From IMG/VR virus record IMGVR_UViG_3300003322_000571, positions 186,001-250,000 of that record: a stretch of DNA of 64,000 nucleotides. One strand, written 5' to 3'. The notes beneath the pieces were generated by a model. That model did not search any database. It was not told where the DNA came from and saw only the letters and a list, made by a program, of their open reading frames with translations. The translations under genes were made by a program, and so were the position numbers. This document shows, piece after piece, positions 18,714-62,733 of the stretch (its first letter is position 1; each line of letters begins with the position of its first letter).

Positions 18714-19648
18714 TAGATCTGTCCCAGTTGAATGAACAATGCTGCTGCATTGATTTCAGGATCAGCAACGAGTGTGTGCTTATACAAATGTTCAGCGATC
18801 GCCATGATCCCAGCATCCCACTTGTCTCGGTCCTTATACTTCGGTGCTTTGTGGAGGTTCTCGTACAGGAAGCGGTACACATCTTCCCATTCATCAGGAG
18901 AAACTGTAGCACAAACCAGCTTACGAGCACCCGACCAGTCGTCTTCAGCAAGAAGGTCAAGTAACTGGAACTTGTAGTCACCACTAGCCGCAGTAGTATC
19001 CGGCTTAGTCAACACACCTTCAATCGTGTATTGCTCAACCTTGTTGACGATCTTACGAACGTCCGGATACGCGCTAGAGATGAAGTAATCGACAGTCTCG
19101 AGCTTGAACTTGACGCCTTCAGCAGCAAGGATGTTGATCACATATTCAGCAATGTCATCTTTGTTCGACGACTTGAACGTGAACTCCTGGCAGCGAGAAC
19201 GAATCGGAGGAATGATCTTGTTAACGTGGTTGCACGTCAGAATGAATCGAACACTGTCGCTGACCTCTTCCATAAACGCCTTGAGAGCGTTTTGTGCATC
19301 AGGAGTCAGTTTGTCCGCTTCTTCCAGGTGAATGATCTTGAAAGCACCCATCGCCATCGATAGAGCGAAGTTCTGAATCTTCTCACGGAAGACATCAATA
19401 CCACGCTCGGATGATGCGTTGATTTCAAGAACGTCAGCAGGATCGAGCTCACAAGCGTCGATTAGGATTCTCGCTAGAGTTGTCTTACCGGTGCCTTGCA
19501 CACCTGCGAAAATCAGCTGAGGGATCGATTTGTCATTGAGGCAGCGATTAACCGTAGCCTTCAAATTATCGTCTTGGAAGACGTATTGATCGATTGAGGT
19601 CGGTCGATACTTTTCGACCCAAATGTCGCGAATTTTACGTGTGGTCAT
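18713..19648 (-). CDS. Clamp loader large subunit (T4 gp44 / RFC AAA+ ATPase)
   Basis: WVEKYRP, Walker [21 protein letters not shown], Walker B-like LEEADKL, FILTCN and SRC motif; start placed at ATG 19648 after AAGGAG. Confidence 0.92.
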
Positions 19649-19710
19649 CCACAAACTCCTTATTGTGATGCCATTATAGCGATCACAATAAGGGTGGATC
19701 AACTAAAAGG

Positions 19711-21003
19711 TTACAGATACTTGTCGTATCCATTACGCTTGAGGATCTGTTCAATTTGGCGAAGTTCGCTTGCTTGAACATCGTTCAGCGTCTTACCTTG
19801 CGCCTGCTCGTACTTGAGATGGCGGAGATGAGCAACGAGCTCTTCCAACTTTGCGTCAGTGCTGTTGAACTTCTTGCTCGGATTGTACACATATGGTGGC
19901 TGTGTAGTTACCGGTGCAGGAGTCGGCTCAGCTTTCCGTTCAATAAAGATCGGATTGACACGCTCTCCCTCCACTTCTTCGAACACAAACGAAGTCTGAG
20001 GATCAAGCAAAGCTTCCTGTTCATCAGCTGTAACAACTGTTGACGGTTCTACTGTGTCTTCCGTCACAGTCATCGTTGGAGATACGCTGTAACTAGCGAG
20101 TGCATCCAATGTGTTCTGGAACGGTTTCGAATATTCCGCAGGGTTCTGTGGTTCTTCATCTCCAACAGCATTAGGAATAGGTTGATCGATTTCTGATGTA
20201 ACCTCAGGCATTTGCTTTTGTCTGACATCAGCTTTGATACGATCAAGGTATTGTTGTTTCGCTTCTTTCTCTTTATCTTCCTGGCGGAACTTCAAAGCGA
20301 TATTGACAGCAAGTGTCAATGCAACAGCCATTGGATCGAATGCAAAGATAATCAAGAAGATTAGGTATTTCGTCGCATCGTCAGTCGGCATGTCAAATGC
20401 TTTTGCAACGAACATGATCGGACCGATATGCGCTTCTGTCTTGATCAGTTCTTGCTTTAGCTCCATCAACTGTTTGTCCAAATCCGCAACACGTTGCGTA
20501 ACTTGCTTCTGTTCCTCTCGGAACTGACGATTCAGTTGATCACGACCTCGATTAGTTTCGCGGAGGATACGAGCAGCATTCGCATCCGTACCGACTGCAA
20601 TAGATCCAGAGTTCCCTGCGATGATGTCATCGATTTGCTTTTTGCGATCAAGAGCACGCGACTTTTCTTGTTCAAGGAGAGTCACCTGTTCTTGTTTTTG
20701 CTTAAGCGGAAGAACGTCTTGTTGATAGCCGGTAGAAAGGTAGCCAAAAATACCGGTTGAAGTAAGAACCATCAAAGCGACAACACCCGTAATTAGGTAT
20801 GTCTTGAGAATCCAACCCGTCCGAGACCAGTAGCGGTATAGGTAGGAAGCCGCGACGAGCTTACCCGCTTCAAGTGAAGCGCCCATCACGACTACTGACC
20901 AAAACACGCCACTAAATGTGTACGCGAGACCGTACACACTGAAGTAGGCAGCAGCACCAGCAATAGCGGTAGCCGCTGCCATCAGCAGCGCAATGAAGTA
21001 CAT
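19711..21003 (-). CDS. Membrane protein with coiled-coil soluble domain
   Basis: Three N-terminal hydrophobic helices, a long coiled coil, a fourth TM helix (YLIFLIIFAFDPMAVALTLA) and a low-complexity C-terminus. Confidence 0.75.
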   Translation of the reverse strand: MYFIALLMAAATAIAGAAAYFSVYGLAYTFSGVFWSVVVMGASLEAGKLVAASYLYRYWSRTGWILKTYLITGVVALMVLTSTGIFGYLSTGYQQDVLPLKQKQEQVTLLEQEKSRALDRKKQIDDIIAGNSGSIAVGTDANAARILRETNRGRDQLNRQFREEQKQVTQRVADLDKQLMELKQELIKTEAHIGPIMFVAKAFDMPTDDATKYLIFLIIFAFDPMAVALTLAVNIALKFRQEDKEKEAKQQYLDRIKADVRQKQMPEVTSEIDQPIPNAVGDEEPQNPAEYSKPFQNTLDALASYSVSPTMTVTEDTVEPSTVVTADEQEALLDPQTSFVFEEVEGERVNPIFIERKAEPTPAPVTTQPPYVYNPSKKFNSTDAKLEELVAHLRHLKYEQAQGKTLNDVQASELRQIEQILKRNGYDKYL

Positions 21004-21006
21004 TGT

Positions 21007-21600
21007 TTATTCCCCTTGTAGCGTGTACGCGAGAATGTCTGTGTCTTTGATGAACGCAATTGTCTTACCGCGATACTTGATCGTATTGGTAAAATTGCTG
21101 TCATCGTAGAAGATTGTGGCACCAGTCAGATCGTCTACCGACGCTGCTTTTGCATCTGGGCCTACACTCAACACCTTACCAGATGCTGAGTTGTTCACAC
21201 CACCGACGATCATCAACAAACCGTGGCTGCGAACATTTTCGCGGGGTTGGATTTCAAACAGAATCCAGTTGGCGATTGGTTTGAGAGAGGAGCCATCGTT
21301 GTTACTTTCAACAGCGACGACTTCCTTCTCATCAGTCTTCCACAGCTTCTCGCCTTCGACTTTGACACCTTCAGTCCAGCGAAGAGCTGGAACAAGAGCC
21401 ATGTATCCTGGTTTCATCGTTTTGACATCTGGTCCAACGTATCGAACAGTTACAAAACGTGATTCCTTTGCGCTGGAATCGAACTGGTCACCTGCCAGAA
21501 TGATCCCACTATCTGTCTGTCCCTTAACAAACTCATTGCGAGTGTTGATTGCGTCGTTGAACTGGAAGAGAACAGAATTACCGAGTGCCGTGATTGTCAT
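21007..21600 (-). CDS. groES: Co-chaperonin with two tandem GroES (Cpn10) domains
   Basis: Domain 1: ITALGNSVLF...TDSGIILAG...VRYVGPDV...DEKEVVAV. Domain 2: LKPIANWILF...SHGLLMI...GKVLSVGPDA...IKDTDILAY. Each aligns by eye to GroES. Confidence 0.8.
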   Translation of the reverse strand: MTITALGNSVLFQFNDAINTRNEFVKGQTDSGIILAGDQFDSSAKESRFVTVRYVGPDVKTMKPGYMALVPALRWTEGVKVEGEKLWKTDEKEVVAVESNNDGSSLKPIANWILFEIQPRENVRSHGLLMIVGGVNNSASGKVLSVGPDAKAASVDDLTGATIFYDDSNFTNTIKYRGKTIAFIKDTDILAYTLQGE

Positions 21601-21605
21601 TATTG

Positions 21606-21836
21606 TTATTCGCTTTCGTCAGAGGATGGATCTTCATCTTGAAGATCCGTTTCCTCGACTATAGGCTGAGTCGCTTTTTTAGTCAACTTCTTGATCCTAC
21701 GTTTGAATTTCTGGTCAATGAAATCCTCGCGAGCTTTAACCACTTGTGTTTTCGGAGCCGTCGCAATCTGTTGCTTAATCTTGAGCAGGTCAAAATCGAC
21801 GAGTTCTCCACGTGCGCTTCTAACGCTCTTTGCCAT
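21606..21836 (-). CDS. Small basic hypothetical protein
   Basis: 76-aa ORF with RBS AGGAG: VRSARGELVDFDLLKIKQQIA. Confidence 0.7.
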   Translation of the reverse strand: MAKSVRSARGELVDFDLLKIKQQIATAPKTQVVKAREDFIDQKFKRRIKKLTKKATQPIVEETDLQDEDPSSDESE

Positions 21837-21844
21837 AGGTACTC

Positions 21845-22408
21845 CTATTCATGTAAAAAGTCATTGATATCAAGACCGTACGCAAATGAGTCAACGTCGT
21901 GAACGCCAATAACGTACAAGACGTACGAAGACACGCTACTACCACGACCAACACCCCATACGGATTTGTTAGCAGTTAGTGTATTTATGATCCAAATTAT
22001 CGCTCGCAAAACGTCGAAAAGACCACGAGATTTGTAAGCTGCAATTTCTTCCAGCAATCTGTAGTCGCGTTTTTCGATTTCTTCGGCGGACAAATCTACG
22101 GTTAGTTTGATGTGTTTATCAAACAAGTATTCGACGATGTCGAGATACTTATATTCGTCCGGAAATGTCCATTGCTTTGATAATGGACGACATTGAGTTT
22201 TGACCTCAATTTTCTTATCTTGAGGTGCAAACTTATTGTAGTTGCGAACGTCCGGTGTCATTTCGTCAACGTACCGGACGTCATATTGATTCATATAGCG
22301 CAGCAATTTGGCTGGGTCAAACGATGAATCGCCGTCAAACCACAGCCGGCGGTCTTTCAATTCAGTACTACGCAAACGAGCTTTGGTAATTTCCACGTGA
22401 GGTATCAA
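21845..22408 (-). CDS. dnaE: DNA polymerase III alpha (DnaE)-like fragment, N-terminal half of the catalytic core
   Basis: C-terminus YRLLEEI...VWGVGRGSSVSSYVLYVIGVHDVDSFAYGLDINDFL matches DnaE RL..E...VGPGRGSAAGSLVAY.LGIT.IDP..Y.L.FERFL. Confidence 0.8.
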   Translation of the reverse strand: MIPHVEITKARLRSTELKDRRLWFDGDSSFDPAKLLRYMNQYDVRYVDEMTPDVRNYNKFAPQDKKIEVKTQCRPLSKQWTFPDEYKYLDIVEYLFDKHIKLTVDLSAEEIEKRDYRLLEEIAAYKSRGLFDVLRAIIWIINTLTANKSVWGVGRGSSVSSYVLYVIGVHDVDSFAYGLDINDFLHE

Positions 22409-22778
22409 TATCAGGGGTTTTTGCCTTCATTCCCTCTGATCCAAACGGTGCACGAACACCGCCAATCTGCTGCGGTGGAAGCATCGGTTGTGATTGCTGA
22501 GGTTGCATCAAAGGCGAAGGACCTGCTGGAATACCTGGCGCATCCATTCCCATAGGGATATGTTGCATAGGATGCGGGAATTGTGGTACTTGCATCATTT
22601 GTGGTTGATGCTGAACAGCAGGTGCAACGGTTTCCTCAAGATTATCAATCATTGCACGAATCCGTTTCCACTGTTTAGGGGTAGGCGTCCACTCCACCGT
22701 GTCATCGATCTCCGTTGCAAATTCAACTGCATCGATGAACGTTTTCAGCTCGGCAACTGTAAACTTCTTGTCACTCAT
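22368..22778 (-). CDS. Hypothetical protein with Gln/Pro-rich C-terminus
   Basis: 136-aa ORF with RBS GGGAGA. Confidence 0.7.
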   Translation of the reverse strand: MSDKKFTVAELKTFIDAVEFATEIDDTVEWTPTPKQWKRIRAMIDNLEETVAPAVQHQPQMMQVPQFPHPMQHIPMGMDAPGIPAGPSPLMQPQQSQPMLPPQQIGGVRAPFGSEGMKAKTPDIDTSRGNYQSSFA

Positions 22779-22790
22779 ATATTTCTCCCG

Positions 22791-23282
22791 TCAATCGCCG
22801 ATCAAATCGCCGACGATGATGTCTTTAAGGTACTTATTGTATGTGTCAGACGGGGAGACCGATACCCACTCATCAGGTCCAATCGGATGACACAGCATTT
22901 GATGCTTGTTTAACGACGGACCGACGTTCTTTGCCTCGATGAAATAGTTCGTCACAGTTACCACTGCTGGTGCAGGAGCTGACTTGTTTGGACCGTATAC
23001 CATTGCTGTGAATTCACGTCCTGCACATTCGGCAAGCTCAACTACATCTAGCTGAGCTGTATCACGGTCATACACAAGAATGTTCCAGTTTGCTGGCAGA
23101 TTGAATTCAAACCCTTTAATCATCAGTCTGATTGTGGGGCAAACGACTTCTTCCAACATCAGCAACGGGGAGAGTGTGAAGTCAAGCATAGACAGATCGA
23201 GGACCCACATATGGTCTGACACCGTAGGTCCGTGGATACTGTCGAGAATTACTGGCTGAGATTCGCCATCAAAGATTAGCAT
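22791..23282 (-). CDS. Hypothetical protein, possible degenerate Hint (intein-like) fold
   Basis: 163-aa beta-rich ORF whose hydrophobic spacing resembles Hint blocks; lacks Cys1, TxxH and terminal HN. Confidence 0.6.
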   Translation of the reverse strand: MLIFDGESQPVILDSIHGPTVSDHMWVLDLSMLDFTLSPLLMLEEVVCPTIRLMIKGFEFNLPANWNILVYDRDTAQLDVVELAECAGREFTAMVYGPNKSAPAPAVVTVTNYFIEAKNVGPSLNKHQMLCHPIGPDEWVSVSPSDTYNKYLKDIIVGDLIGD

Positions 23283-23284
23283 TG

Positions 23285-23455
23285 TTATTGTCCTTTAGGC
23301 CATGTAAATGCATCAGCCTTGCCTGTTAATACTGCCCATGCGTCTTTGAATCGACGGATAAAAGATCCTGTCAGCGGTCGGGCACGAACCCATTCACCTT
23401 CGATTAATGCGTCGACTTTGAAAGCAGGGTTGAGTAGTTGGTCTAGTGTGTACAT
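23285..23455 (-). CDS. Small hypothetical protein
   Basis: Start placed at ATG 23455 after AAGGGA; MYTLDQLL...AFTWPKGQ. Confidence 0.55.
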   Translation of the reverse strand: MYTLDQLLNPAFKVDALIEGEWVRARPLTGSFIRRFKDAWAVLTGKADAFTWPKGQ

Positions 23456-23468
23456 TATATGTGTTCCC

Positions 23469-25004
23469 TTACATTTGTTCAAGCATTTTCATTTGTTTAG
23501 CGTAGTCGACTTTGATCTTTTTGTACGGATACTGTGCTTCGTCATAGTAGTTCGTACGTGTCTTCAAGTGCTTCTTGCCATACTTCAAGTCACTGCAAAT
23601 GTCGTAGATATTGACAAAATTCTTGTCAGATGACTTACGCAATCCACGACCAACGGCCTGAATCACTCGGATGAACGACTTACCGATGTCAATGAAGAAC
23701 AAGTTGAAGATTCGGTTGATACTAAGCCCCGTACCAGCGATATGAACAGTTGCGAACACAACGAGGTCGTCTCGCTCCTTGAACAACTGGTAAATCTTGT
23801 CACGCTCTGACGACTTTTTAACATCAGTCCCGTTAACGAAGTAAGATCCAGGAATCAACGAAGCGAGCTTTCGGCCTAGAGCAACACTATCGACGAAGAT
23901 CATCGTATTGCCCTTCTTGTTATCCTGCTTGGCCAGGATCATCTCAGCAATCCACTCCATCCGTGTTTCATTACGGTGCGTGAATGACTTTTCAGCAGAG
24001 AAGTCAGGGAAATATCCATCTTTAAACTGTGTATATGTCGGAGGTTTACTTCCTTCAACGTCATTTTCACAGAACTGACGGTACTCAGCATTGAGGTCTT
24101 CTTCGAGCTGGATCACATCGATGTGAAGATTCGACAGGACACCCTCATCAATCAATTGACGTGCAGCGACAGTTTCTCGCACAGGACCGAGTGCAACATG
24201 CACAGCCATTAGATCAGAAGGATCCTTAGGCAAAGTACCCGTGACGCCAAATCTGTATAGAATGTTAGCTGAATGGTCTGTTAGAATCTTCTGCAGGACA
24301 TTTCCCTTTGCACCGTGACATTCGTCAACGAGAACAAGTTGGAATTGTTCAACGATCTTCGGGTTGTTCTTGAGTGCTTGCCATGTTGAAATCACATGCT
24401 GGTGGTTCAACGTTTTTGTTGTACCACTGTACTCACCAACGTCAAGTCCGTAGTGAACGTAGTCCTTCTTTGTCTGACGAATCAAGTCCTGGTTCGGGAC
24501 AATCGTCAATGTTTTGATTCCAAGCTTACCGTATGAATCAACAAGTGCAGTACAAATGATCGTCTTGCCTGCGCCCGTTGACGCGAGAAGGATCCCGTAT
24601 CCAGATTCAATAAGAGCGTTGATACCAGACACTTGGTAATGTCGTAGAACTGTCGGCTCACCAGTATCAGCGTGTGGAACATGAGCATAGAACTGATCCG
24701 TAATCAACGGCGGATCAGCTTTCTCTCCCGTACGAAGGTCTTCAAGTGTAATTTTGTACCCAAGCTTAACGATGATGGGAATCAATTCGTCAAGCAGATA
24801 CATGTACGTCTTCCCGTTCATCGAGAAGTAGTGGATCTTACCGTCCCATTGTCCCAGCTTGTAGCGTGGATTAAAGAAGTAGTTCGGTGCAGGAACTGCA
24901 TACTTATTGTATAGCATCTCGTAGTGATCTCCGTGGAGACCAACTACGACAGCAGTAACTTCGTTCAACAGGCGGATTTTACATTCGCTCTTTTTGTTCA
25001 TCAT
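23469..25004 (-). CDS. uvsW: SF2 DNA helicase, UvsW-like
   Basis: Walker A STGAGKT, DECH box, GVTGT motif III, TGLSINRI and IQAVGRGLR motif VI; follows uvsY as in T4-like phages. Confidence 0.9.
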   Translation of the reverse strand: MMNKKSECKIRLLNEVTAVVVGLHGDHYEMLYNKYAVPAPNYFFNPRYKLGQWDGKIHYFSMNGKTYMYLLDELIPIIVKLGYKITLEDLRTGEKADPPLITDQFYAHVPHADTGEPTVLRHYQVSGINALIESGYGILLASTGAGKTIICTALVDSYGKLGIKTLTIVPNQDLIRQTKKDYVHYGLDVGEYSGTTKTLNHQHVISTWQALKNNPKIVEQFQLVLVDECHGAKGNVLQKILTDHSANILYRFGVTGTLPKDPSDLMAVHVALGPVRETVAARQLIDEGVLSNLHIDVIQLEEDLNAEYRQFCENDVEGSKPPTYTQFKDGYFPDFSAEKSFTHRNETRMEWIAEMILAKQDNKKGNTMIFVDSVALGRKLASLIPGSYFVNGTDVKKSSERDKIYQLFKERDDLVVFATVHIAGTGLSINRIFNLFFIDIGKSFIRVIQAVGRGLRKSSDKNFVNIYDICSDLKYGKKHLKTRTNYYDEAQYPYKKIKVDYAKQMKMLEQM

Positions 25005-55111: not shown

Positions 55112-56533
55112 TTAAGCGAAGTTGAAGTTCGAGACATTGATTTTGCCATAGTAGTCTGCGCTGTTACCGAGCGACGTTTCCGTAGCCGTGAACGCTGTCT
55201 TACCGTAGCGAGTCATCATCGATACAACTGGCTGGAACGTGACTGGGTTGATAACAACGCCAGAGCTCATCAGCGGGATGTATGGGCAGTAGAAGTAGCC
55301 CGTGTCAGTTTCGCCATTACCACCTTTGTAACCAACGAGGATAACGTCGTTAACTGCTGCACCGAGACCGGACACTTGGTTCCACAGGTAGCTGTAGACC
55401 TTGATCGTACCATTCAACGTACCAACCAACATTGTGTTGTTAGGACCCTTGAACGAACCTGCAACAGCTGGTGCGAACACCGACTTAGCAGCGGACTGGA
55501 GGATCGAGACAACCATTGGGCTGACAACGATGAAGTTACCTGGACCACGACGTGTCTTACGAGCAATTTCGTTACACACTGCGTTGATCACGATACCGAG
55601 GTTCGCGAAACGGTCACCGAGGTATGCTGGCTGGTACTGTGGGCCGAGGCCGATAGTAGCGTAGTCGTATGTACCGACCGTGCCTGCCAAAGCGAGCAAG
55701 TCAGACAAGATTTCGCTGTCAATTTCCTGAACGATTTCAGCCGAAACAACTTGGCTGAGTTCGCTCTCGAGGTCGAGACCGTGTTGGCTCTTCAAGTCTT
55801 GCATAGCTTCGACTGTCCAACCTGCTTGCAGCTTACGCGTGCCAGCTTCAACAGCCTGCGATACAACTTCGAGCTTAACCTTACGGCCGCCAGAACCTTC
55901 AATGAACGAACCAGAACCACCGTACAGACGACCGGAAACTTGTTGACCAAGACCGTTGCTGTATGGGCCGAAGTACGTTGTGTCATACGAAGGGAGGCTT
56001 GAAGGCCATGCACCACGCGATGCAGCGCCGTCGATGTCACCAACTGGGTTAGCAGCGATGCCAGATGCGCCTGGATCTTGTGCGAGCGGTGTGCCTACAA
56101 CCGTACCAGCTGCGCCAGAGTAGAACTGACGGAGAACTGGGTTGTTACCGAACATTTCGGCGTTAGCAGCGATCGTACCGTCCGAACCGTTAGCCGTCCA
56201 AGGGTTACCTGGAGTGCCAGCAGCTGGAACTTGAACGCCTTCACCGTACTTGTAGCGCATCGTGTAAACGAGGCCAACTGGACCTTGCATTGGCTGAACA
56301 CCAACGATTTCCGTTGCGATCGTACCAGGGATGATACGGCGGATCATTGGGATCAGGATCTTGCGGAAGCCAGCAACGTCGTGAGCAGCAACAGCGCCAG
56401 CAGCAGCTGTTTCAGACAAGATGTGCTGCTTTTGGTTTTCCAAAAGCGTACCAACGATTTGGCGCTTAGTTTGGTCGAGGTCGTCCAGGAGCGTTTCCTT
56501 GACTTCTGACCAATTTTCAAACAATTCGTTCAT
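55112..56533 (-). CDS. Major capsid protein (T4 gp23-like)
   Basis: LIPMIRRIIP, EIVGVQPMQGPVGL, AGTRKLQAGWTVEAMQDL, EIVQEIDSEI, FYCPYIPL and TFQP...MTRYG. Confidence 0.95.
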   Translation of the reverse strand: MNELFENWSEVKETLLDDLDQTKRQIVGTLLENQKQHILSETAAAGAVAAHDVAGFRKILIPMIRRIIPGTIATEIVGVQPMQGPVGLVYTMRYKYGEGVQVPAAGTPGNPWTANGSDGTIAANAEMFGNNPVLRQFYSGAAGTVVGTPLAQDPGASGIAANPVGDIDGAASRGAWPSSLPSYDTTYFGPYSNGLGQQVSGRLYGGSGSFIEGSGGRKVKLEVVSQAVEAGTRKLQAGWTVEAMQDLKSQHGLDLESELSQVVSAEIVQEIDSEILSDLLALAGTVGTYDYATIGLGPQYQPAYLGDRFANLGIVINAVCNEIARKTRRGPGNFIVVSPMVVSILQSAAKSVFAPAVAGSFKGPNNTMLVGTLNGTIKVYSYLWNQVSGLGAAVNDVILVGYKGGNGETDTGYFYCPYIPLMSSGVVINPVTFQPVVSMMTRYGKTAFTATETSLGNSADYYGKINVSNFNFA

Positions 56534-57638: not shown

Positions 57639-58277
57639 TTATGCTTTACGGGCAAACAGGCCTTCTGACAGATATTTCAGGAATTCCTTCTTGAAATATT
57701 TCTGTGCATCAGCATCGTGTTGCATTTGCTCAGCTAGTGTCAGAACGCGCTTACCGAGCTTTGAATCGAGAGATTCATACATCATGCCTGGATATGCATT
57801 TGGGGCGCTTGGTGTAATAACAATGTCGTAAGTAATGAACTGGAATCCCTGAACATCACCGCTTTCATTGACATTACCTGCACCGCGGCTCGATACCCCA
57901 ATCTTGACGCCACTCTTAACTAGTTCCTGAGCGATCAAGCCCATAGGAGTATTCAAAAGCTTTGCCTTGCCGTATGCGTCATTTCCGTGCATCCACATTT
58001 CTGTAATGACGTGACTAATACGGTCGCTGTTAATAGTCAGCGACTGTGGGTGGTCGAGCTCACCAAAGATACCGTTGCATTCTTTGATGCGCTGTTTAGC
58101 GTTTTCGACTGCTGCCGAAATTTCTGAGATTGGGTAATTGCGACCGTTGCGGTTTTTGATCGAGCTCTGCATGCAGATACCGTTCAACCACATCGATTTA
58201 CCGTCAGAAGAAGACTCGTTAATCACACGAGCTTCCAACGGTTGCAATTCCTCAACGAGAAGGATTGGTGATGTCAT
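57639..58277 (-). CDS. Prohead protease (gp21-like)
   Basis: NRNGRNYP, GELDHP (catalytic His), KAKLLNTPMG, GVSSRGAG (catalytic Ser) and DIVITPSAPNA. Confidence 0.95.
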   Translation of the reverse strand: MTSPILLVEELQPLEARVINESSSDGKSMWLNGICMQSSIKNRNGRNYPISEISAAVENAKQRIKECNGIFGELDHPQSLTINSDRISHVITEMWMHGNDAYGKAKLLNTPMGLIAQELVKSGVKIGVSSRGAGNVNESGDVQGFQFITYDIVITPSAPNAYPGMMYESLDSKLGKRVLTLAEQMQHDADAQKYFKKEFLKYLSEGLFARKA

Positions 58278-58300: not shown

Positions 58301-58597
58301 TTACATTTCGCAGTCTTCTTCGTCCTTCTTTTGATCCTTTTTGGCCTTCTTCACATCCTTTTCGACTTTGTCAAGGTCTTTGTCGACTTTCTTATCGTCT
58401 TCATCGTCCTTGTCGTCGTCTTCTTTCTTGTCTTCCTTCTTATCGTCCTTGTCTTCTTCGTCAGCTTCCTCACCAAGGAGGATACCGCGAGTCTTGTCAC
58501 GGAGATATTCATGGAAAGCAGTCTTAGCAGCAGCATCGTCCTTATTGATAACTGCTTCGATAACAGCCGTCAGCTGTTGCTTCATTTTCTCGTTCAT
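58301..58597 (-). CDS. Prohead core protein (gp67/gp68-like), highly charged
   Basis: Between portal and protease; Asp/Glu/Lys low-complexity tail. Confidence 0.65.
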   Translation of the reverse strand: MNEKMKQQLTAVIEAVINKDDAAAKTAFHEYLRDKTRGILLGEEADEEDKDDKKEDKKEDDDKDDEDDKKVDKDLDKVEKDVKKAKKDQKKDEEDCEM

Positions 58598-58682: not shown

Positions 58683-60362
58683 TCACTGTGTTTGAGGTGG
58701 ATTACCGCTATTTGCGGCGGGCTGCGCGCCGCCTGCATTTTGTGTATTTCCACCTCCACCCGCCATTTCATCGCCTACAGGACCGCCGAAATCGTCGCCT
58801 AGACCTTGTGGTCCACCTAGGGTTCCAGCCATCATTCCGCTTCCTTCCATACCACCCATTCCGCCTTCTTCAGGTGGTGGACCGTATACAGCGAGCATCA
58901 GTTCCTTAGGATCGCTATCGGGATCCAATCCAAGTTCTTCAACACGCATACGGAAGTTGATCAGAATTTCTTCTTCAGTCCAACCGAGGTATTTGCTCAG
59001 ACCCATACGCTTAGACATGTGAGCAATCTGGTCAGCTTGTGAATATGTAGACAACAAATCGTTGTTCAATTGCTGTTCGCGGTAGATACCGAAGTTTTCT
59101 GGTTCAACCAACTTAATACGGAAAATCGTTGGGTCAATGTTGATACCAGCAGCACGAAGATAACGCTTGAATTCACGGTCAACTACTCGGTCAATGTATC
59201 CCTGGAGACGTTTGACATACATCGCGAAACGCAATTCCATAATGTACGCAACGCCTGTCTTACCGTCGTTAACGATTGCGTTATCTTGACCTTCACGCAT
59301 GTACGACAAAGGAATACGCAAGCCACGGAACACCTTCCACTGGAAGTATTCCAAGTCAGCAAGTTCACCGAGTCCTGCACCACCTGGCAATGTTTCAACC
59401 TTCGAACCACGACCATCCGGACGTTGTGCAAAGAAGAAGTCTTCACTCATTTGCTGCGGGTTGTATACGGAGTCAACTTGCTCAACACCGCCGCCGTACG
59501 TAGGGATCTTTTTCTGACGAATTTCGTTCTTGATCTGCTCAAGGTATGATTTAACACGCTGTGGTGGCATCTTGCCTACGTCAATGTAGAATACACGACG
59601 TTCAGGTGCACGCTGAATACGGTAAATGATGACAGCGTCTTCTAGCAGTTCTTTTTGCTTCTGAGCACGGTAAACGGCGCGGAGAATTGATTCGCCAAAC
59701 GGAGCAGACTCACTGATATCGTCGTTCAGTGTGAACCACACAACGTCATCAGCTGGGAACGTATCAATCAACTCGTTTGAGTTGTTGCCGTAGTGACCAG
59801 TTTGAGAATTGACAGGAGAGTTGGGCGCTTTCGTTTCACGCTTAATTTGCCAGCCGATAACATGCGTCATATCACGTTCATCGACAACAGCTGCGACAAC
59901 GTTCTTCGGATGAACGTATTCCCAACGTGCTGTGTCTTTGTGTCGGATGAAGAAGCAGTCACCGTACTTGATCGTTACACGCGATACTTTGAATAGACGA
60001 GTATCCCAGTCGTGCAGCTTGTTCCAGTAGCGGAGAGTTGCACGAAGCGTTTCTACTACAGACGTGGGGATGTTACGGTCCTTCTCACCTTCAATGACGA
60101 GTTCGAGTGGCATATCGGAGTTAGGATCCGAGCCGACCATTTCTTCTGCAATTGTGTCGAGGGAACGTGCGACTTCTACGTCATTGTCCATCAGGTCGTA
60201 TTCGCGGTAACGCGTAATACGCGACGCAGATCCCTGTACGAGACGTTGATACCAAGTGTAATTCGCATACGATCCCTGATCACCAATATTTTGGTTGTCT
60301 GTCATGGTAGTAACGCCCGGACGAGGGGTTACTACCTTGAAGTAATCAGTGAATTTTGCCAT
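58683..60362 (-). CDS. Portal protein (T4 gp20-like)
   Basis: LLEDAVIIYRIQRAPERRVFYIDVGKMP, EDFFFAQR..GRGSKVETLPGG and LEYFQWKVFRGLRIP.S. Confidence 0.95.
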   Translation of the reverse strand: MAKFTDYFKVVTPRPGVTTMTDNQNIGDQGSYANYTWYQRLVQGSASRITRYREYDLMDNDVEVARSLDTIAEEMVGSDPNSDMPLELVIEGEKDRNIPTSVVETLRATLRYWNKLHDWDTRLFKVSRVTIKYGDCFFIRHKDTARWEYVHPKNVVAAVVDERDMTHVIGWQIKRETKAPNSPVNSQTGHYGNNSNELIDTFPADDVVWFTLNDDISESAPFGESILRAVYRAQKQKELLEDAVIIYRIQRAPERRVFYIDVGKMPPQRVKSYLEQIKNEIRQKKIPTYGGGVEQVDSVYNPQQMSEDFFFAQRPDGRGSKVETLPGGAGLGELADLEYFQWKVFRGLRIPLSYMREGQDNAIVNDGKTGVAYIMELRFAMYVKRLQGYIDRVVDREFKRYLRAAGINIDPTIFRIKLVEPENFGIYREQQLNNDLLSTYSQADQIAHMSKRMGLSKYLGWTEEEILINFRMRVEELGLDPDSDPKELMLAVYGPPPEEGGMGGMEGSGMMAGTLGGPQGLGDDFGGPVGDEMAGGGGNTQNAGGAQPAANSGNPPQTQ

Positions 60363-60429: not shown

Positions 60430-62733
60430 TCAGCCGATATATTGATATTTTGAACTAAATTTAGTATCTGCGCGAAGTGGTTGGGTCTTCGTTTGATCGC
60501 TCTTTTCACGATCAGTCAAAGTAGAAGCTGCAAGTGTCTTCTTTTGCAAATCAATTAGTTCGCGATTCTGACTAATCATCGTCGACAAATAATCGTTCGA
60601 CTGATCAAGCTGTTTAACTTGCTGAGCAATTCCGCTAGCAGTAGCAGTTGTCGCTGATTCGATCACGACATTTGACTCAATCATCGCTTTTGTCTGATCC
60701 TTGACAGCCTTAGTAACAGATGTTGTCGGCAAATTAACAGGTGCAGTAGACGCTGGGCTTGCACCTGCAGGACTATCAGGATCAAACTGACTGCCTACGG
60801 CTTTACCAGCTTTACCACCGAGGTACGATCCGCCAATACCGCCGCCAAGTCCGCCTAGCAAACCACCGAGAACCGTACCAATCCCCGGCAAGATAGCCGT
60901 ACCGAGTGCTGCACCAGCAAGTGCACCACCCCATCCGCCTGCAATACCACCACCTGCAGAGCCGACTCCCTTACCAATCGACGCTCCAGCTTTGCCTGTT
61001 TGCTGATACTCGTCATATCCTTCGTACGCACCGTAGGCGAGCGATGCAGCAGGACCTAGGATCTTTCCAGCTGTACCGAGAGTACGGCCAAGACCACTCG
61101 CGGCTTTACCAGCCGCGGCCCCCTCACCAGCGACTGCACCGCCAATTCCAAGCTTTCCACCGAGCTTGCCAATGTTGCCGACCATGCCACGAGCAGCAAT
61201 CACGGCAACCATTGCGGCAATCCCCGATAGCACGACTCCAGACCAATGTTGTCCAGAAGCGATCAGCTTAGCTTGTTCCCAGATACCTGCAGTAGCAAGT
61301 GCTGTTTTAGCGAGTGGATCCTTCGTGGCATCAATGAATTGCTTCGAAAGATCAGCATTAGCACTCTTCAACGTATCACCAAGCGTTGTTGAGAAGTTGC
61401 TATTCTTGCCGTAATACTGTTCTAGATCCAGCTTGTCAAGAAGCGTTGTGGCAAAAATCTCCGTACCTAGACCTTGACCTGCTGCTTGGTCCATTGCATT
61501 AGCAGCACGTTGGCTGAACTCTTGCAACATGCGGGTTTGCTCAGGCGTTGCTCGCTTACCAGCAGTAATTGCCTGCGCAGCTTCCTCACCACCAGCAATA
61601 CCCATTGCTCCCGACAATGCTCGAACGCGAGCTGCTTGACGGAGACGATCAAGAGGTTTTGCAGCAACCATCTTGTTCAACATCTTTGCAGCTTCGCGCG
61701 CTTGCTCAGCAGACATTCCTGCTGCAATAGACTGTTGAATCAACGCACGTTGGCTGCGAAGGATTGCTTCACGTTCTTCCTTACGCGCTGAACGAAGCAT
61801 GTCAATCGATTCAGCGTCACCGGCAACATCGTTATACAGTTGATGCGCTTGTTCGACAGAAAGTCCTGTTTGACGACGAAGCGCTACGAGATCGTTCTGG
61901 TATTGTTCCATACCGATCATCGTTGGGCGAATGCCCTTTGTAGCAAAGTCGTTAGCTGTCTGAGTGGCGAGTTTGAGGCCTTCCTCGAACGAGCCAGTCA
62001 TGATCGTGAAGCGATCAACAGAATTTGTCAGCTGCTTAAGCCCTTCAGACGTGCCGCCCATAGCATTAAACATCTGACGAGCACCGTTTGTGATGTTCGC
62101 AAATGTCGTTGCATCAAGCTTAAACTTGAGAGCTTCGTTCTGCTGAGCAGCCATTGCATCAATCAAGTTCCCGGTACCTTCTACAAGACCACCGTTCGCT
62201 TTATTTTGCGATAGAACTTGCTTGCCTGCTGTCGTTACGGCAGAGCCGAACCATGAAACGGCAAGGCTAGCCCAGTCAACATTCTTAACGAGGCCACTGA
62301 ATGATTTGTTAACAGCGGTCGTTGCTGATTGCAGCCTCTGCGAAGCAGTGCGGTGTCTGTCAGCAGCATTAGTGACAGTACGGCCAAGACGCTCTAGTTC
62401 ATCTGTAGGAGCGTTGTTTGCAATTGCAGCAGCTTGATCACGGTGAGCCTTTTCAAGAGCATGTGCCGCTTCAATCTCAGCCTTCTTTGCCTTGATTGCT
62501 TCTTGGACAAGCTTTTCTTGCTGTTCGTTCAGTTTCCTACCAGCGCGCAATTGCTTCGAGAACTCAGCAAGGTCGTTTGTTGCGTCTTCACGCGCCCGAC
62601 GTTGTGCTTCTTGTGCTCGAGCAATATTCGATTGACTTGCCAACAAACGTTCAATACCTTGAGTCAACAACTGCAGTTGTTGCGCGGTTGCTTGAAGCTG
62701 TTGATTAAGTACTGTGGTGTTGACGTCTGCCAT
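60430..62733 (-). CDS. Tape-measure-like protein (767 aa)
   Basis: Long Ala/Gln-rich helical protein with C-terminal Gly-zipper hydrophobic segments; adjacent to the gp26-like gene. Confidence 0.65.
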   Translation of the reverse strand: MADVNTTVLNQQLQATAQQLQLLTQGIERLLASQSNIARAQEAQRRAREDATNDLAEFSKQLRAGRKLNEQQEKLVQEAIKAKKAEIEAAHALEKAHRDQAAAIANNAPTDELERLGRTVTNAADRHRTASQRLQSATTAVNKSFSGLVKNVDWASLAVSWFGSAVTTAGKQVLSQNKANGGLVEGTGNLIDAMAAQQNEALKFKLDATTFANITNGARQMFNAMGGTSEGLKQLTNSVDRFTIMTGSFEEGLKLATQTANDFATKGIRPTMIGMEQYQNDLVALRRQTGLSVEQAHQLYNDVAGDAESIDMLRSARKEEREAILRSQRALIQQSIAAGMSAEQAREAAKMLNKMVAAKPLDRLRQAARVRALSGAMGIAGGEEAAQAITAGKRATPEQTRMLQEFSQRAANAMDQAAGQGLGTEIFATTLLDKLDLEQYYGKNSNFSTTLGDTLKSANADLSKQFIDATKDPLAKTALATAGIWEQAKLIASGQHWSGVVLSGIAAMVAVIAARGMVGNIGKLGGKLGIGGAVAGEGAAAGKAASGLGRTLGTAGKILGPAASLAYGAYEGYDEYQQTGKAGASIGKGVGSAGGGIAGGWGGALAGAALGTAILPGIGTVLGGLLGGLGGGIGGSYLGGKAGKAVGSQFDPDSPAGASPASTAPVNLPTTSVTKAVKDQTKAMIESNVVIESATTATASGIAQQVKQLDQSNDYLSTMISQNRELIDLQKKTLAASTLTDREKSDQTKTQPLRADTKFSSKYQYIG

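What the first reader, a model, noticed from the sequence alone, without database searches (positions are those of the whole stretch)
21007..21600. Tandem double-domain GroES (Cpn20-like) encoded by a phage
Seen: the 197-aa protein contains two complete GroES-like domains, each with the initial P(L/I)xxxV(L/I) strand, a mobile-loop G(I/L)(I/L) motif, the V..VGPD hairpin and a terminal (E/D)(V/I)(V/L)A strand. Established: T4 gp31 and most phage co-chaperonins are single-domain, while tandem Cpn10 fusions are characteristic of plastid Cpn20. Inference: an even-numbered domain ring or a mixed ring with host GroES could alter the folding cage for the capsid protein, or retune host GroEL.
Basis: partly seen in the sequence, partly recalled or inferred. 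Interest (0 to 1): 0.65.

Follow-up and report, generated by a model that had tools for sequence, protein, structure and literature searches.

The report
Phage gp31-like plus GroES-like fused co-chaperonin
A 350-kb jumbo phage encodes one 197-residue protein made of a T4-gp31-like domain fused to a GroES-like domain, a two-domain lid for the host GroEL folding machine of a kind so far described only for chloroplast Cpn20.

Summary
Window 21007-21600 (minus strand) is one intact 197-aa ORF with two GroES-fold domains joined by a 7-residue linker. Only the C-domain (106-191) passes Pfam Cpn10. The N-domain (1-98) is nevertheless a Cpn10 homologue. It hits the T4 gp31 PHROG, aligns to the C-domain by hhalign (95%), superposes on GroES/Cpn10/gp31 at Z about 9, and its family profile hits GroES structures at 1e-10.

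The halves are not twins. The N-domain belongs to a large phage-only gp31-like subfamily with a long mobile loop, no roof hairpin and 'PRW...RWT...WKTDE' motifs. The C-domain resembles short canonical GroES.

At least 53 proteins share this architecture, always in the same replication-module slot. Cultured relatives (XacN1, Xoo-sp13, RsoM2USA, RAS14) carry only the gp31-like single domain there, plus a separate GroES elsewhere. One related contig carries the reverse-order fusion in the same slot.

The genome has a gp23-type capsid protein, no GroEL and no other Cpn10. Both mobile-loop hydrophobic triplets are conserved. A 4-copy model gives the canonical head-to-tail GroES interface.

Most likely it is a co-chaperonin lid for host GroEL that folds the capsid protein. 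Ring stoichiometry and GroEL binding are untested. It is a new variant of a known kind.

The parts
21007..21600 (-). Whole gene for the 197-aa tandem co-chaperonin (P0001), stop codon included. It lies 5 nt after the stop of the upstream 76-aa ORF and 3 nt before the ATG of the downstream 430-aa membrane-protein gene.
   Evidence: same architecture in at least 53 homologues
21307..21600 (-). N-domain, residues 1-98: a gp31-like ('RWT') Cpn10 domain with a long mobile loop and no roof hairpin. Invariant P71-A-L-R-W-T76 and W87.
   Evidence: phrog_931 (the T4 gp31 family) E 1.2e-6; structural Z 8.5-9.4 to GroES/Cpn10 and 8.6 to gp31; family profile hits GroES structures at 1e-10; more than 100 single-domain relatives
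21496..21507 (-). N-domain mobile-loop core G32-I33-I34-L35, the presumed GroEL-binding triplet.
   Evidence: G in 47 of 53; I/L/F at 33 in 52 of 53; commonest I/V/L at 34 and L/I/M at 35; pLDDT below 50 at 28-36
21286..21306 (-). Inter-domain linker, residues 99-105. Variable in sequence and length.
21010..21285 (-). C-domain, residues 106-197: a GroES-like Cpn10 domain with a canonical-length mobile loop and no roof hairpin. A 4-residue insertion (153-156) occurs in only 1 to 5 of the 53 family members.
   Evidence: Pfam PF00166 29.7 bits; phrog_3188; PDB profile best hit Cpn20 domain 2 at 5.8e-8
21211..21222 (-). C-domain mobile-loop core G127-L128-L129-M130.
   Evidence: G in 45 of 53, followed by hydrophobic residues at 128-130 and V131 in 40 of 53; pLDDT below 50 at 129-134
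55112..56533 (-). T4 gp23-type major capsid protein (473 aa), the presumed client. The link is inferred, not shown.
   Evidence: PF07068 325 bits; prohead protease at 57639-58277 and portal at 58683-60362 next to it

Best explanation
The gene encodes a phage co-chaperonin whose single polypeptide supplies two adjacent positions of a GroES-type lid. One is a gp31-like domain with a long mobile loop and no roof hairpin. The other is a GroES-like domain with a normal-length loop and also no roof hairpin. Protomers join head to tail: the last strand of the C-domain pairs with the first strand of the next N-domain. Both mobile loops dock on host GroEL, because the phage has no GroEL of its own. The resulting roofless dome serves folding of the phage's gp23-type major capsid protein, as gp31 does in T4. 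The architecture most likely arose by fusing two co-chaperonin types that related jumbo phages still encode as separate genes. Shown here: the two Cpn10 folds, their subfamily identities, conservation of both loops, the synteny history, and the absence of GroEL or a second Cpn10. Inferred: GroEL binding, the capsid client and the ring stoichiometry. The ring could be a homotetramer of 8 domains or 3 protomers plus one host GroES.
For: Domain identity. gp31-like features of the N-domain family against E. coli GroES are about 9 extra residues before and in the mobile loop and a 9-residue roof-hairpin deletion. The C-domain lacks the roof-hairpin insertion of Cpn20 domain 2. Both loops keep Gly plus a hydrophobic triplet across 53 proteins and are the two low-confidence segments of the model. 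A four-copy model gave ipSAE 0.58 against a best control of 0.01. In the tool's calibration that mark was reached by 20 of 30 proteins solved as pairs and 1 of 23 solved as single chains, counts that hold only roughly here because my own alignment and four copies were used. The runs agree in at least 71% of contacts and partner pLDDT is at least 72. The interface is 186-194 of one copy against 1-11, 54-57 and 77-88 of the next, which is the GroES inter-subunit geometry. The genome has a gp23-type MCP, no Cpn60 and no other Cpn10 or gp31-like gene. Fusion history: the same slot (helicase ... pol fragment, orf76, X, membrane protein, clamp loader) holds a 103-aa gp31-like single domain in XacN1 and Xoo-sp13 and the tandem gene in 8 IMG/VR relatives. 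XacN1, Xoo-sp13, RsoM2USA and RAS14 each also carry at least one separate canonical Cpn10 (PMC5852040). A reverse-order GroES-like plus gp31-like fusion sits in the same slot on L023. The C-domain profile ranks short canonical GroES (36-48 bits) above every gp31-like single (1-35 bits). In the free tree the N-domains fall inside the gp31-like clade (SH-aLRT 98) and the C-domains form one separate clade (88). Precedent that tandem co-chaperonins work with 7-fold chaperonins: PMC3542282 and PMC5780408.
Against: There is no experimental or read-level evidence of expression or GroEL binding. The host is unknown. The N-domain alone fails Pfam Cpn10 and its narrow profile finds no GroES in the PDB. 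The C-domain evolves faster (50% against 64% mean column identity; longer branches), so it could be partly relaxed. The C-domain shows no detectable specific kinship to XacN1's separate GroES (hhalign 8%; no tblastn hit). The AU test does not reject N- and C-domains grouping together (p 0.457), so fusion versus ancient duplication is unresolved. The complex model may pass from memory of solved GroES rings. The gene lies in a replication module, not the head module.
Confidence: 0.7

Rival explanations
1. Same function, different origin. The second domain arose by internal tandem duplication of the gp31-like gene, as is assumed for Cpn20, followed by fast divergence. It was not a fusion with a separate GroES gene.
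For: hhalign links the two halves (95.4%). The halves share an 'aromatic-T ... K..G' pattern. The AU test does not reject N plus C as one group (p 0.457, lnL difference 3.15). No free-standing close relative of the C-domain was found.
Against: The C-domain would have had to lose every gp31-like signature (long loop, PRW, RWT, WKTDE) and regain canonical features. Its profile prefers canonical GroES over all gp31-like singles in an unbiased 1.8-billion-protein search. The free tree puts it outside the 98%-supported gp31-like clade. Relatives carry both types as separate genes, and a reverse-order fusion exists.
Confidence: 0.22
2. Only one domain is a working GroEL-binding unit. The other, probably the faster-evolving C-domain, is a structural spacer or regulatory appendage, so the lid engages GroEL through fewer than seven loops.
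For: The C-domain is less conserved. In several relatives it falls below the Pfam threshold or is not detected at all. The Cellulophaga phage 200-aa 'cpn10' has an N-half with no Pfam hit and only a weak profile match.
Against: The Gly plus hydrophobic triplet of the C-domain loop is kept in most of the 53 proteins. The strands that form the ring interface are well conserved, with invariant or near-invariant F115, F170 and F183.
Confidence: 0.15
3. The protein does not act on GroEL. It caps another heptameric machine, such as the phage's ClpP-like protease, as the plastid Cpn11/20/23 complex caps ClpP in entry 7ekq.
For: The best structural match is the Cpn20 chain of a ClpP-co-chaperonin complex. 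The genome has a ClpP-family hit at G000:C1:303943-304230.
Against: The match is to the co-chaperonin fold, not to a ClpP-specific feature. The ClpP-like gene is about 97 kb away. gp31-family proteins are established GroEL partners (annotation; PMC5649160).
Confidence: 0.04
4. Artefact: two adjacent single-domain genes joined by an assembly or frameshift error.
For: None found.
Against: The frame is continuous with a short linker. The same 185-198-aa architecture appears in at least 53 independent proteins and 8 IMG/VR loci. Base composition is even across the gene.
Confidence: 0.01

Closest known systems
Plastid Cpn20 / Cpn21 / Cpn23 (for example Chlamydomonas CPN20, PDB 7ekq chain R)
   Same: Two Cpn10 domains joined head to tail in one chain of about 190 residues with a short linker, and a mobile loop in each domain. 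It is the best whole-length structural match (Foldseek E 8e-8, TM 0.63; Z 12.7 over 173 residues) and the best sequence match of the C-domain profile (5.8e-8).
   Different: This protein is phage-encoded and has no transit peptide. Identity to Cpn20 is only about 19%. The two halves belong to different Cpn10 subfamilies (gp31-like plus GroES-like). Both lack the roof hairpin that Cpn20 domain 2 keeps. The single-domain state in syntenic relatives suggests the second domain was gained within a phage lineage, which would make this an independent invention rather than descent from Cpn20.
T4 gp31 and RB49 CocO (phage co-chaperonins for gp23 folding; phrog_931)
   Same: The N-domain matches the gp31 PHROG (E 1.2e-6), and its family profile aligns to T4 gp31 (hhalign 94.5%; PDB 1g31 at 4e-3; Z 8.6). 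It has a long mobile loop and no roof hairpin. The phage has a gp23-type capsid protein and no GroEL.
   Different: gp31 and CocO are single-domain homoheptamers. Here the gp31-like unit is covalently tied to a second, GroES-like unit. Sequence similarity to gp31 itself is weak and confined to the first two thirds of the domain.
Single-domain gp31-like protein plus separate GroES of XacN1-group jumbo phages (XacN1 ORF243 and ORF282)
   Same: ORF243 is the syntenic orthologue of the N-domain (hhalign 99.5%, 38% identity; the neighbouring genes match at 39-54% identity). These phages also encode a canonical GroES (PMC5852040).
   Different: Those are two separate genes about 32 kb apart, and ORF243 is unannotated ('predicted ORF'). 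Here there is one fused gene and no free GroES.
Cellulophaga phage phi18:3 gp096 'chaperonin cpn10' (200 aa) and other multi-Cpn10 metagenomic proteins (P0173, P0168, P0229)
   Same: These are double-length or triple-length Cpn10 proteins in or near phages. phi18:3 gp096 matches the whole model (TM 0.64).
   Different: They are unrelated lineages with different domain pairs. The phi18:3 N-half has no Pfam hit and only a weak profile match (hhalign 30%). P0173 and P0168 are repeats of canonical GroES. P0229 has the reverse order of the same two domain types.

Membership tests
Cpn10 / GroES (Pfam PF00166) | Sequence scores above the family's curated threshold | tested here: met
   The C-domain 106-191 scores 29.7 bits against a cut-off of 21.1. 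The N-domain alone gives no hit. However, 27 of 39 members of its subfamily alignment pass, and that profile hits GroES structures at about 1e-10 over the full length.
Cpn10 / GroES (Pfam PF00166) | GroES beta-barrel fold in each domain | tested here: met
   Model residues 1-100 match Cpn10/GroES at Z 8.5-9.4, rmsd 2.2-2.8 A over 83-88 residues. The whole model matches Cpn20 at Z 12.7. This is a predicted model, pLDDT 79.
Cpn10 / GroES (Pfam PF00166) | Flexible mobile loop carrying Gly plus a hydrophobic triplet that binds GroEL | tested here: met
   G32-I-I-L and G127-L-L-M are conserved across 53 proteins. Both lie in the only two segments with pLDDT below 50. Actual binding was not tested.
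Cpn10 / GroES (Pfam PF00166) | Ring assembly through pairing of first and last strands of neighbouring subunits (seven positions) | tested here: inconclusive
   The four-copy model shows this interface (ipSAE 0.58, best control 0.01). It cannot give ring size or closure, and it may reflect memory of solved GroES rings.
Cpn10 / GroES (Pfam PF00166) | Nucleotide-dependent binding to GroEL and co-chaperonin activity | not testable with these tools
   This needs biochemistry or genetics. The host is unknown.
T4 gp31 / CocO phage co-chaperonins (phrog_931) | Homology to gp31 | tested here: met
   The N-domain matches phrog_931 at E 1.2e-6. T4 gp31 itself scores 169 bits on that PHROG. The family profile aligns to gp31 at hhalign 94.5% and to PDB 1g31 at 4e-3. 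The match is weak and applies to the N-domain only.
T4 gp31 / CocO phage co-chaperonins (phrog_931) | Roof hairpin deleted and mobile loop lengthened relative to GroES | tested here: met
   The alignment to E. coli GroES shows about 9 extra residues around the loop and a 9-residue roof deletion in the N-domain family. The C-domain lacks the roof hairpin but has a normal-length loop.
T4 gp31 / CocO phage co-chaperonins (phrog_931) | Single-domain subunit forming a homoheptamer | tested here: not met
   There are two domains per chain. It is therefore not a plain gp31-type protein.
T4 gp31 / CocO phage co-chaperonins (phrog_931) | Serves a gp23-type major capsid protein with host GroEL | tested here: inconclusive
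   A gp23-family MCP is present (325 bits) and no phage GroEL is found. The client relationship is inferred only.
Plastid Cpn20 | Two Cpn10 domains head to tail in one polypeptide | tested here: met
Plastid Cpn20 | Common descent with plastid Cpn20 (nuclear-encoded, with a transit peptide) | tested here: not met
   The gene is in a phage genome and has no N-terminal extension. Syntenic relatives have the single-domain state, which suggests an in-lineage gain of the second domain. No phylogeny including Cpn20 sequences was run.

The most novel reading that the evidence does not exclude
Jumbo phages of this group build their GroEL lid from two different subunit types, gp31-like and GroES-like, in alternation. 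XacN1-type phages supply them as two genes. This clade, and independently the reverse-order L023 lineage, hard-wire the 1:1 alternation by fusion. The resulting lid would be either an 8-domain ring on a 7-fold GroEL or a 3-protomer ring completed by one captured host GroES. Obligate hetero-oligomeric co-chaperonin lids would then not be a plastid peculiarity, and the lid would be a way for a phage to commandeer host GroEL.
Probability: 0.3. Interest if true: 0.75.

Novelty: new variant of a known kind. Interest (0 to 1): 0.6.

Why it matters
Co-chaperonin lids are textbook homoheptamers. The one accepted exception, tandem Cpn20, is described as chloroplast-specific (PMC5780408), and it poses an unsolved question: how does an even number of domains cap a 7-fold ring? 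Here the same architecture appears in a simple phage-bacterium setting, and the two halves differ visibly (long against short loop). There are natural 'split' relatives and a reverse-order fusion to compare with. That gives a tractable system for the symmetry-mismatch problem and for asking whether phages mix their own subunits with host GroES. It also identifies the unannotated single-domain genes of XacN1, Xoo-sp13, RsoM2USA and RAS14 (listed as 'predicted ORF' or 'hypothetical protein') as gp31-like co-chaperonins. I found no paper in the searchable library that mentions a tandem phage co-chaperonin. That library is incomplete, so earlier mention elsewhere cannot be excluded.

Tried and rejected
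(1) A near-identity DNA search of 19000-24000 against GenBank phages found nothing. tblastn found only N-domain matches in five jumbo phages. The C-domain alone gave one non-significant hit.

(2) The narrow N-domain profile against the PDB gave only weak alcohol-dehydrogenase hairpin hits and no GroES. This was superseded by the broader family profile.

(3) The word-index search with the C-domain profile found nothing. The exhaustive search was therefore used.

(4) I tried to tie the C-domain to XacN1's separate GroES. hhalign gave 8%, there was no tblastn hit in the genome, and the XacN1 GroES neighbourhood is not conserved here. No direct donor was identified.

(5) The AU test of 'N and C domains form one group' gave p 0.457, so it was not rejected. 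The tree cannot settle duplication against fusion.

(6) P0157, a 108-aa free-standing C-like protein, was examined as a possible 'split' form. Its contig is only 778 bp and the upstream fragment is unrelated, so it is uninformative.

(7) The 98-aa ORF at 58301-58597 near the head genes was checked as a possible second GroES. It has no PHROG hit, and no Cpn10 hit was found anywhere else in the genome.

(8) The frameshift or assembly-artefact reading was rejected (see rivals).

Full report
**The object.**
- Window 21007-21600 on the minus strand is one uninterrupted 197-codon ORF (P0001).
- It starts 5 nt after the stop of a 76-aa ORF and ends 3 nt before the ATG of a 430-aa membrane-protein gene.
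- Base composition is even across it.
- The window belongs to a 350,089-bp virus record with direct terminal repeats, rated complete.
- The neighbours are replication genes: clamp loader, a small Pol III-alpha-like fragment and a helicase.
- About 34 kb away in the window lies a T4-type head module. It holds a gp23-family major capsid protein (PF07068, 325 bits), a prohead protease and a portal.

**Two domains.**
- Pfam Cpn10 matches only residues 106-191 (29.7 bits). The N-half alone gives no Pfam hit.
- PHROGs give 'co-chaperonin GroES' in two stretches, and 'head morphogenesis' phrog_931 on residues 2-93 (E 1.2e-6).
- phrog_931 is the family of T4 gp31, which itself scores 169 bits on it.
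- Profiles of the two halves, built from 13 homologues, align to each other at 95.4% probability, E 1.7e-8.
- An AlphaFold2 model (pLDDT 79, pTM 0.76) has exactly two disordered segments, 28-36 and 129-134. These lie at the two predicted mobile loops.
- The best solved-structure match over the whole length is the tandem Chlamydomonas Cpn20: Foldseek E 8e-8 and TM 0.63, then Z 12.7 over 173 residues.
- Residues 1-100 superpose on GroES/Cpn10 at Z 8.5-9.4 and on T4 gp31 at Z 8.6.
The N-half qualifies as Cpn10 only through family-level and structural evidence.

**The halves are different kinds of Cpn10.**
- The N-domain profile retrieves more than 100 single-domain proteins of 96-135 aa. They share 'SGI.L ... 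PRWA.V..VGPD ... RWT ... WKTDE' motifs.
- Many of these are labelled GroES or carry PF00166. In a broad subfamily alignment, 27 of 39 members pass Pfam Cpn10.
- That alignment's profile hits GroES, Cpn10 and Cpn11 structures at about 1e-10, and gp31 at 4e-3.
- Against E. coli GroES this subfamily has about 9 extra residues around the mobile loop and lacks the 9-residue roof hairpin. These are the hallmarks of gp31 and CocO (PMC5649160).
- The C-domain profile found nothing in the word-index search.
- In an exhaustive search of 1.8 billion representatives, the C-domain profile found about 50 tandem proteins first. Short (82-99 aa) canonical GroES-like proteins followed at 36-48 bits. No gp31-like single was in the top 150.
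- In a maximum-likelihood tree the N-domains sit inside the gp31-like clade (SH-aLRT 98). XacN1 ORF243 sits there too.
- The C-domains form one separate clade (88), weakly joined to canonical GroES.
- An AU test does not reject forcing N and C together (p 0.457). The tree alone therefore cannot exclude an ancient duplication.

**A conserved family and its history.**
- At least 53 proteins of 185-198 aa share the N-then-C architecture.
- Eight IMG/VR loci carry it in an identical gene order: helicase, orf163, orf136, pol fragment, orf76, tandem gene, membrane protein, clamp loader.
- In XacN1 and Xoo-sp13 the same slot holds a 103-aa single gp31-like domain, annotated only as 'predicted ORF' or 'hypothetical protein'. 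The same single-domain gene is present in RsoM2USA and RAS14.
- All four of these phages also carry at least one separate canonical Cpn10 gene elsewhere (PMC5852040).
- The window's genome has no other Cpn10 or gp31-like gene and no GroEL.
- On contig L023 the same slot holds a 198-aa protein with the reverse order, GroES-like then gp31-like.
- Two separate genes in relatives, plus two fusions in opposite orders at one locus, is the classic signature of proteins that work together. This is the main argument for fusion and for a mixed lid.

**Functional constraint and assembly.**
- Across the 53 proteins both loops keep a glycine followed by a hydrophobic triplet. For the N-loop, G32 is kept in 47 of 53 and I/L/F at 33 in 52 of 53. 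For the C-loop, G127 is kept in 45 of 53 and V131 in 40 of 53.
- The C-domain is less conserved than the N-domain (mean column identity 50% against 64%).
- A four-copy complex prediction scored ipSAE 0.58 against 0.01 for the best of three controls.
- In the tool's calibration that mark was reached by 20 of 30 proteins solved as pairs and 1 of 23 solved as single chains. Those counts hold only roughly here, because my own alignment and four copies were used.
- The runs agreed in at least 71% of contacts, with partner pLDDT of at least 72.
- The interface pairs residues 186-194 of one copy with 1-11, 54-57 and 77-88 of the next. This is the GroES inter-subunit contact continued from protomer to protomer.
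- The prediction may reflect memory of solved GroES rings, and it gives no ring size.

**Interpretation.**
- The best-supported reading is a co-chaperonin lid for host GroEL, built from alternating gp31-like and GroES-like domains, both roofless.
- It would serve folding of the gp23-type capsid protein, as gp31 does in T4.
- Plastid and apicoplast precedents show that tandem co-chaperonins work with 7-fold chaperonins. They do so as homo-oligomers or as seven-domain mixtures with single Cpn10 (PMC5780408, PMC3542282, PMC4242682).
- Both an 8-domain homotetramer and a ring of 3 protomers plus host GroES remain open.
- GroEL binding, the client and the stoichiometry are inferences.

**Novelty.**
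- Searches of the paper library found no mention of a tandem phage co-chaperonin. Reviews call Cpn20 chloroplast-specific.
- The architecture is not unique to this clade.
- Cultured Cellulophaga phages carry a 200-aa 'cpn10' that matches the two-domain model.
- Metagenomes also hold other double and triple Cpn10 proteins.
- The finding is a new variant of a known kind, not a new category.

Noticed in passing
L023:1630-2226 (protein P0229): A 198-aa protein with the same two domain types in reverse order (GroES-like first, gp31-like second). It sits in the same syntenic slot of a related phage contig, which implies a second, independent fusion.
   Followed up: partly
L002:2992-3303 (XacN1 ORF243); L003:2989-3300; L021:1501-1815; L022:1501-1812: The single-domain proteins of about 103 aa in cultured jumbo phages XacN1, Xoo-sp13, RsoM2USA and RAS14 are annotated 'predicted ORF' or 'hypothetical protein'. 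They are gp31-like co-chaperonin homologues. Each of these phages also has a separate canonical GroES gene.
   Followed up: partly
proteins P0168 (307 aa), P0254 (300 aa), P0173 (198 aa), P0241 (368 aa): Metagenomic proteins with two or three Cpn10 domains in tandem (Pfam finds 3 stretches in P0168 and 2 in P0173). Their origin, viral or cellular, was not checked.
   Followed up: no
L025:1501-2103 (Cellulophaga phage phi18:3 gp096): The 200-aa 'chaperonin cpn10' of cultured Cellulophaga phages has a Pfam Cpn10 C-half, and its predicted structure matches the whole two-domain model (TM 0.64). Its N-half has no Pfam hit and only a weak profile match. It lies next to the large terminase gene.
   Followed up: partly
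G000:C1:303943-304230 (outside the window): A ClpP-family protease match (56 bits, partial) in a 306-aa frame. It may matter because the plastid Cpn11/20/23 complex caps ClpP in entry 7ekq.
   Followed up: no
window 19711-21003 (-): A 430-aa predicted membrane protein immediately downstream. It is conserved in synteny with the co-chaperonin gene in all relatives examined (XacN1 ORF242 and others) and has no PHROG match. Its function is unknown.
   Followed up: no
window 21845-22408 (-): A 187-aa stand-alone fragment-like homologue of the DNA polymerase III alpha subunit (phrog_11127). It is conserved in the same position in XacN1 (ORF245) and in all relatives. Its start overlaps the end of the upstream 136-aa ORF by 41 nt.
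   Followed up: no
window 21133-21144 (-), residues 153-156: A four-residue insertion in the C-domain hairpin region. Of the 53 family members, 48 lack residue 153 and 52 lack residues 154-156.
   Followed up: no
G000:C1:66105-66860 and 69790-69939 (outside the window): Further gp23-family matches: a 444-aa gp24-like paralogue at 112 bits and a short 66-aa fragment.
   Followed up: no
window 60430-62733 (-): A 767-aa protein next to the portal gene with weak tape-measure, tail-lysin and endolysin PHROG matches. It was not examined further.
   Followed up: no
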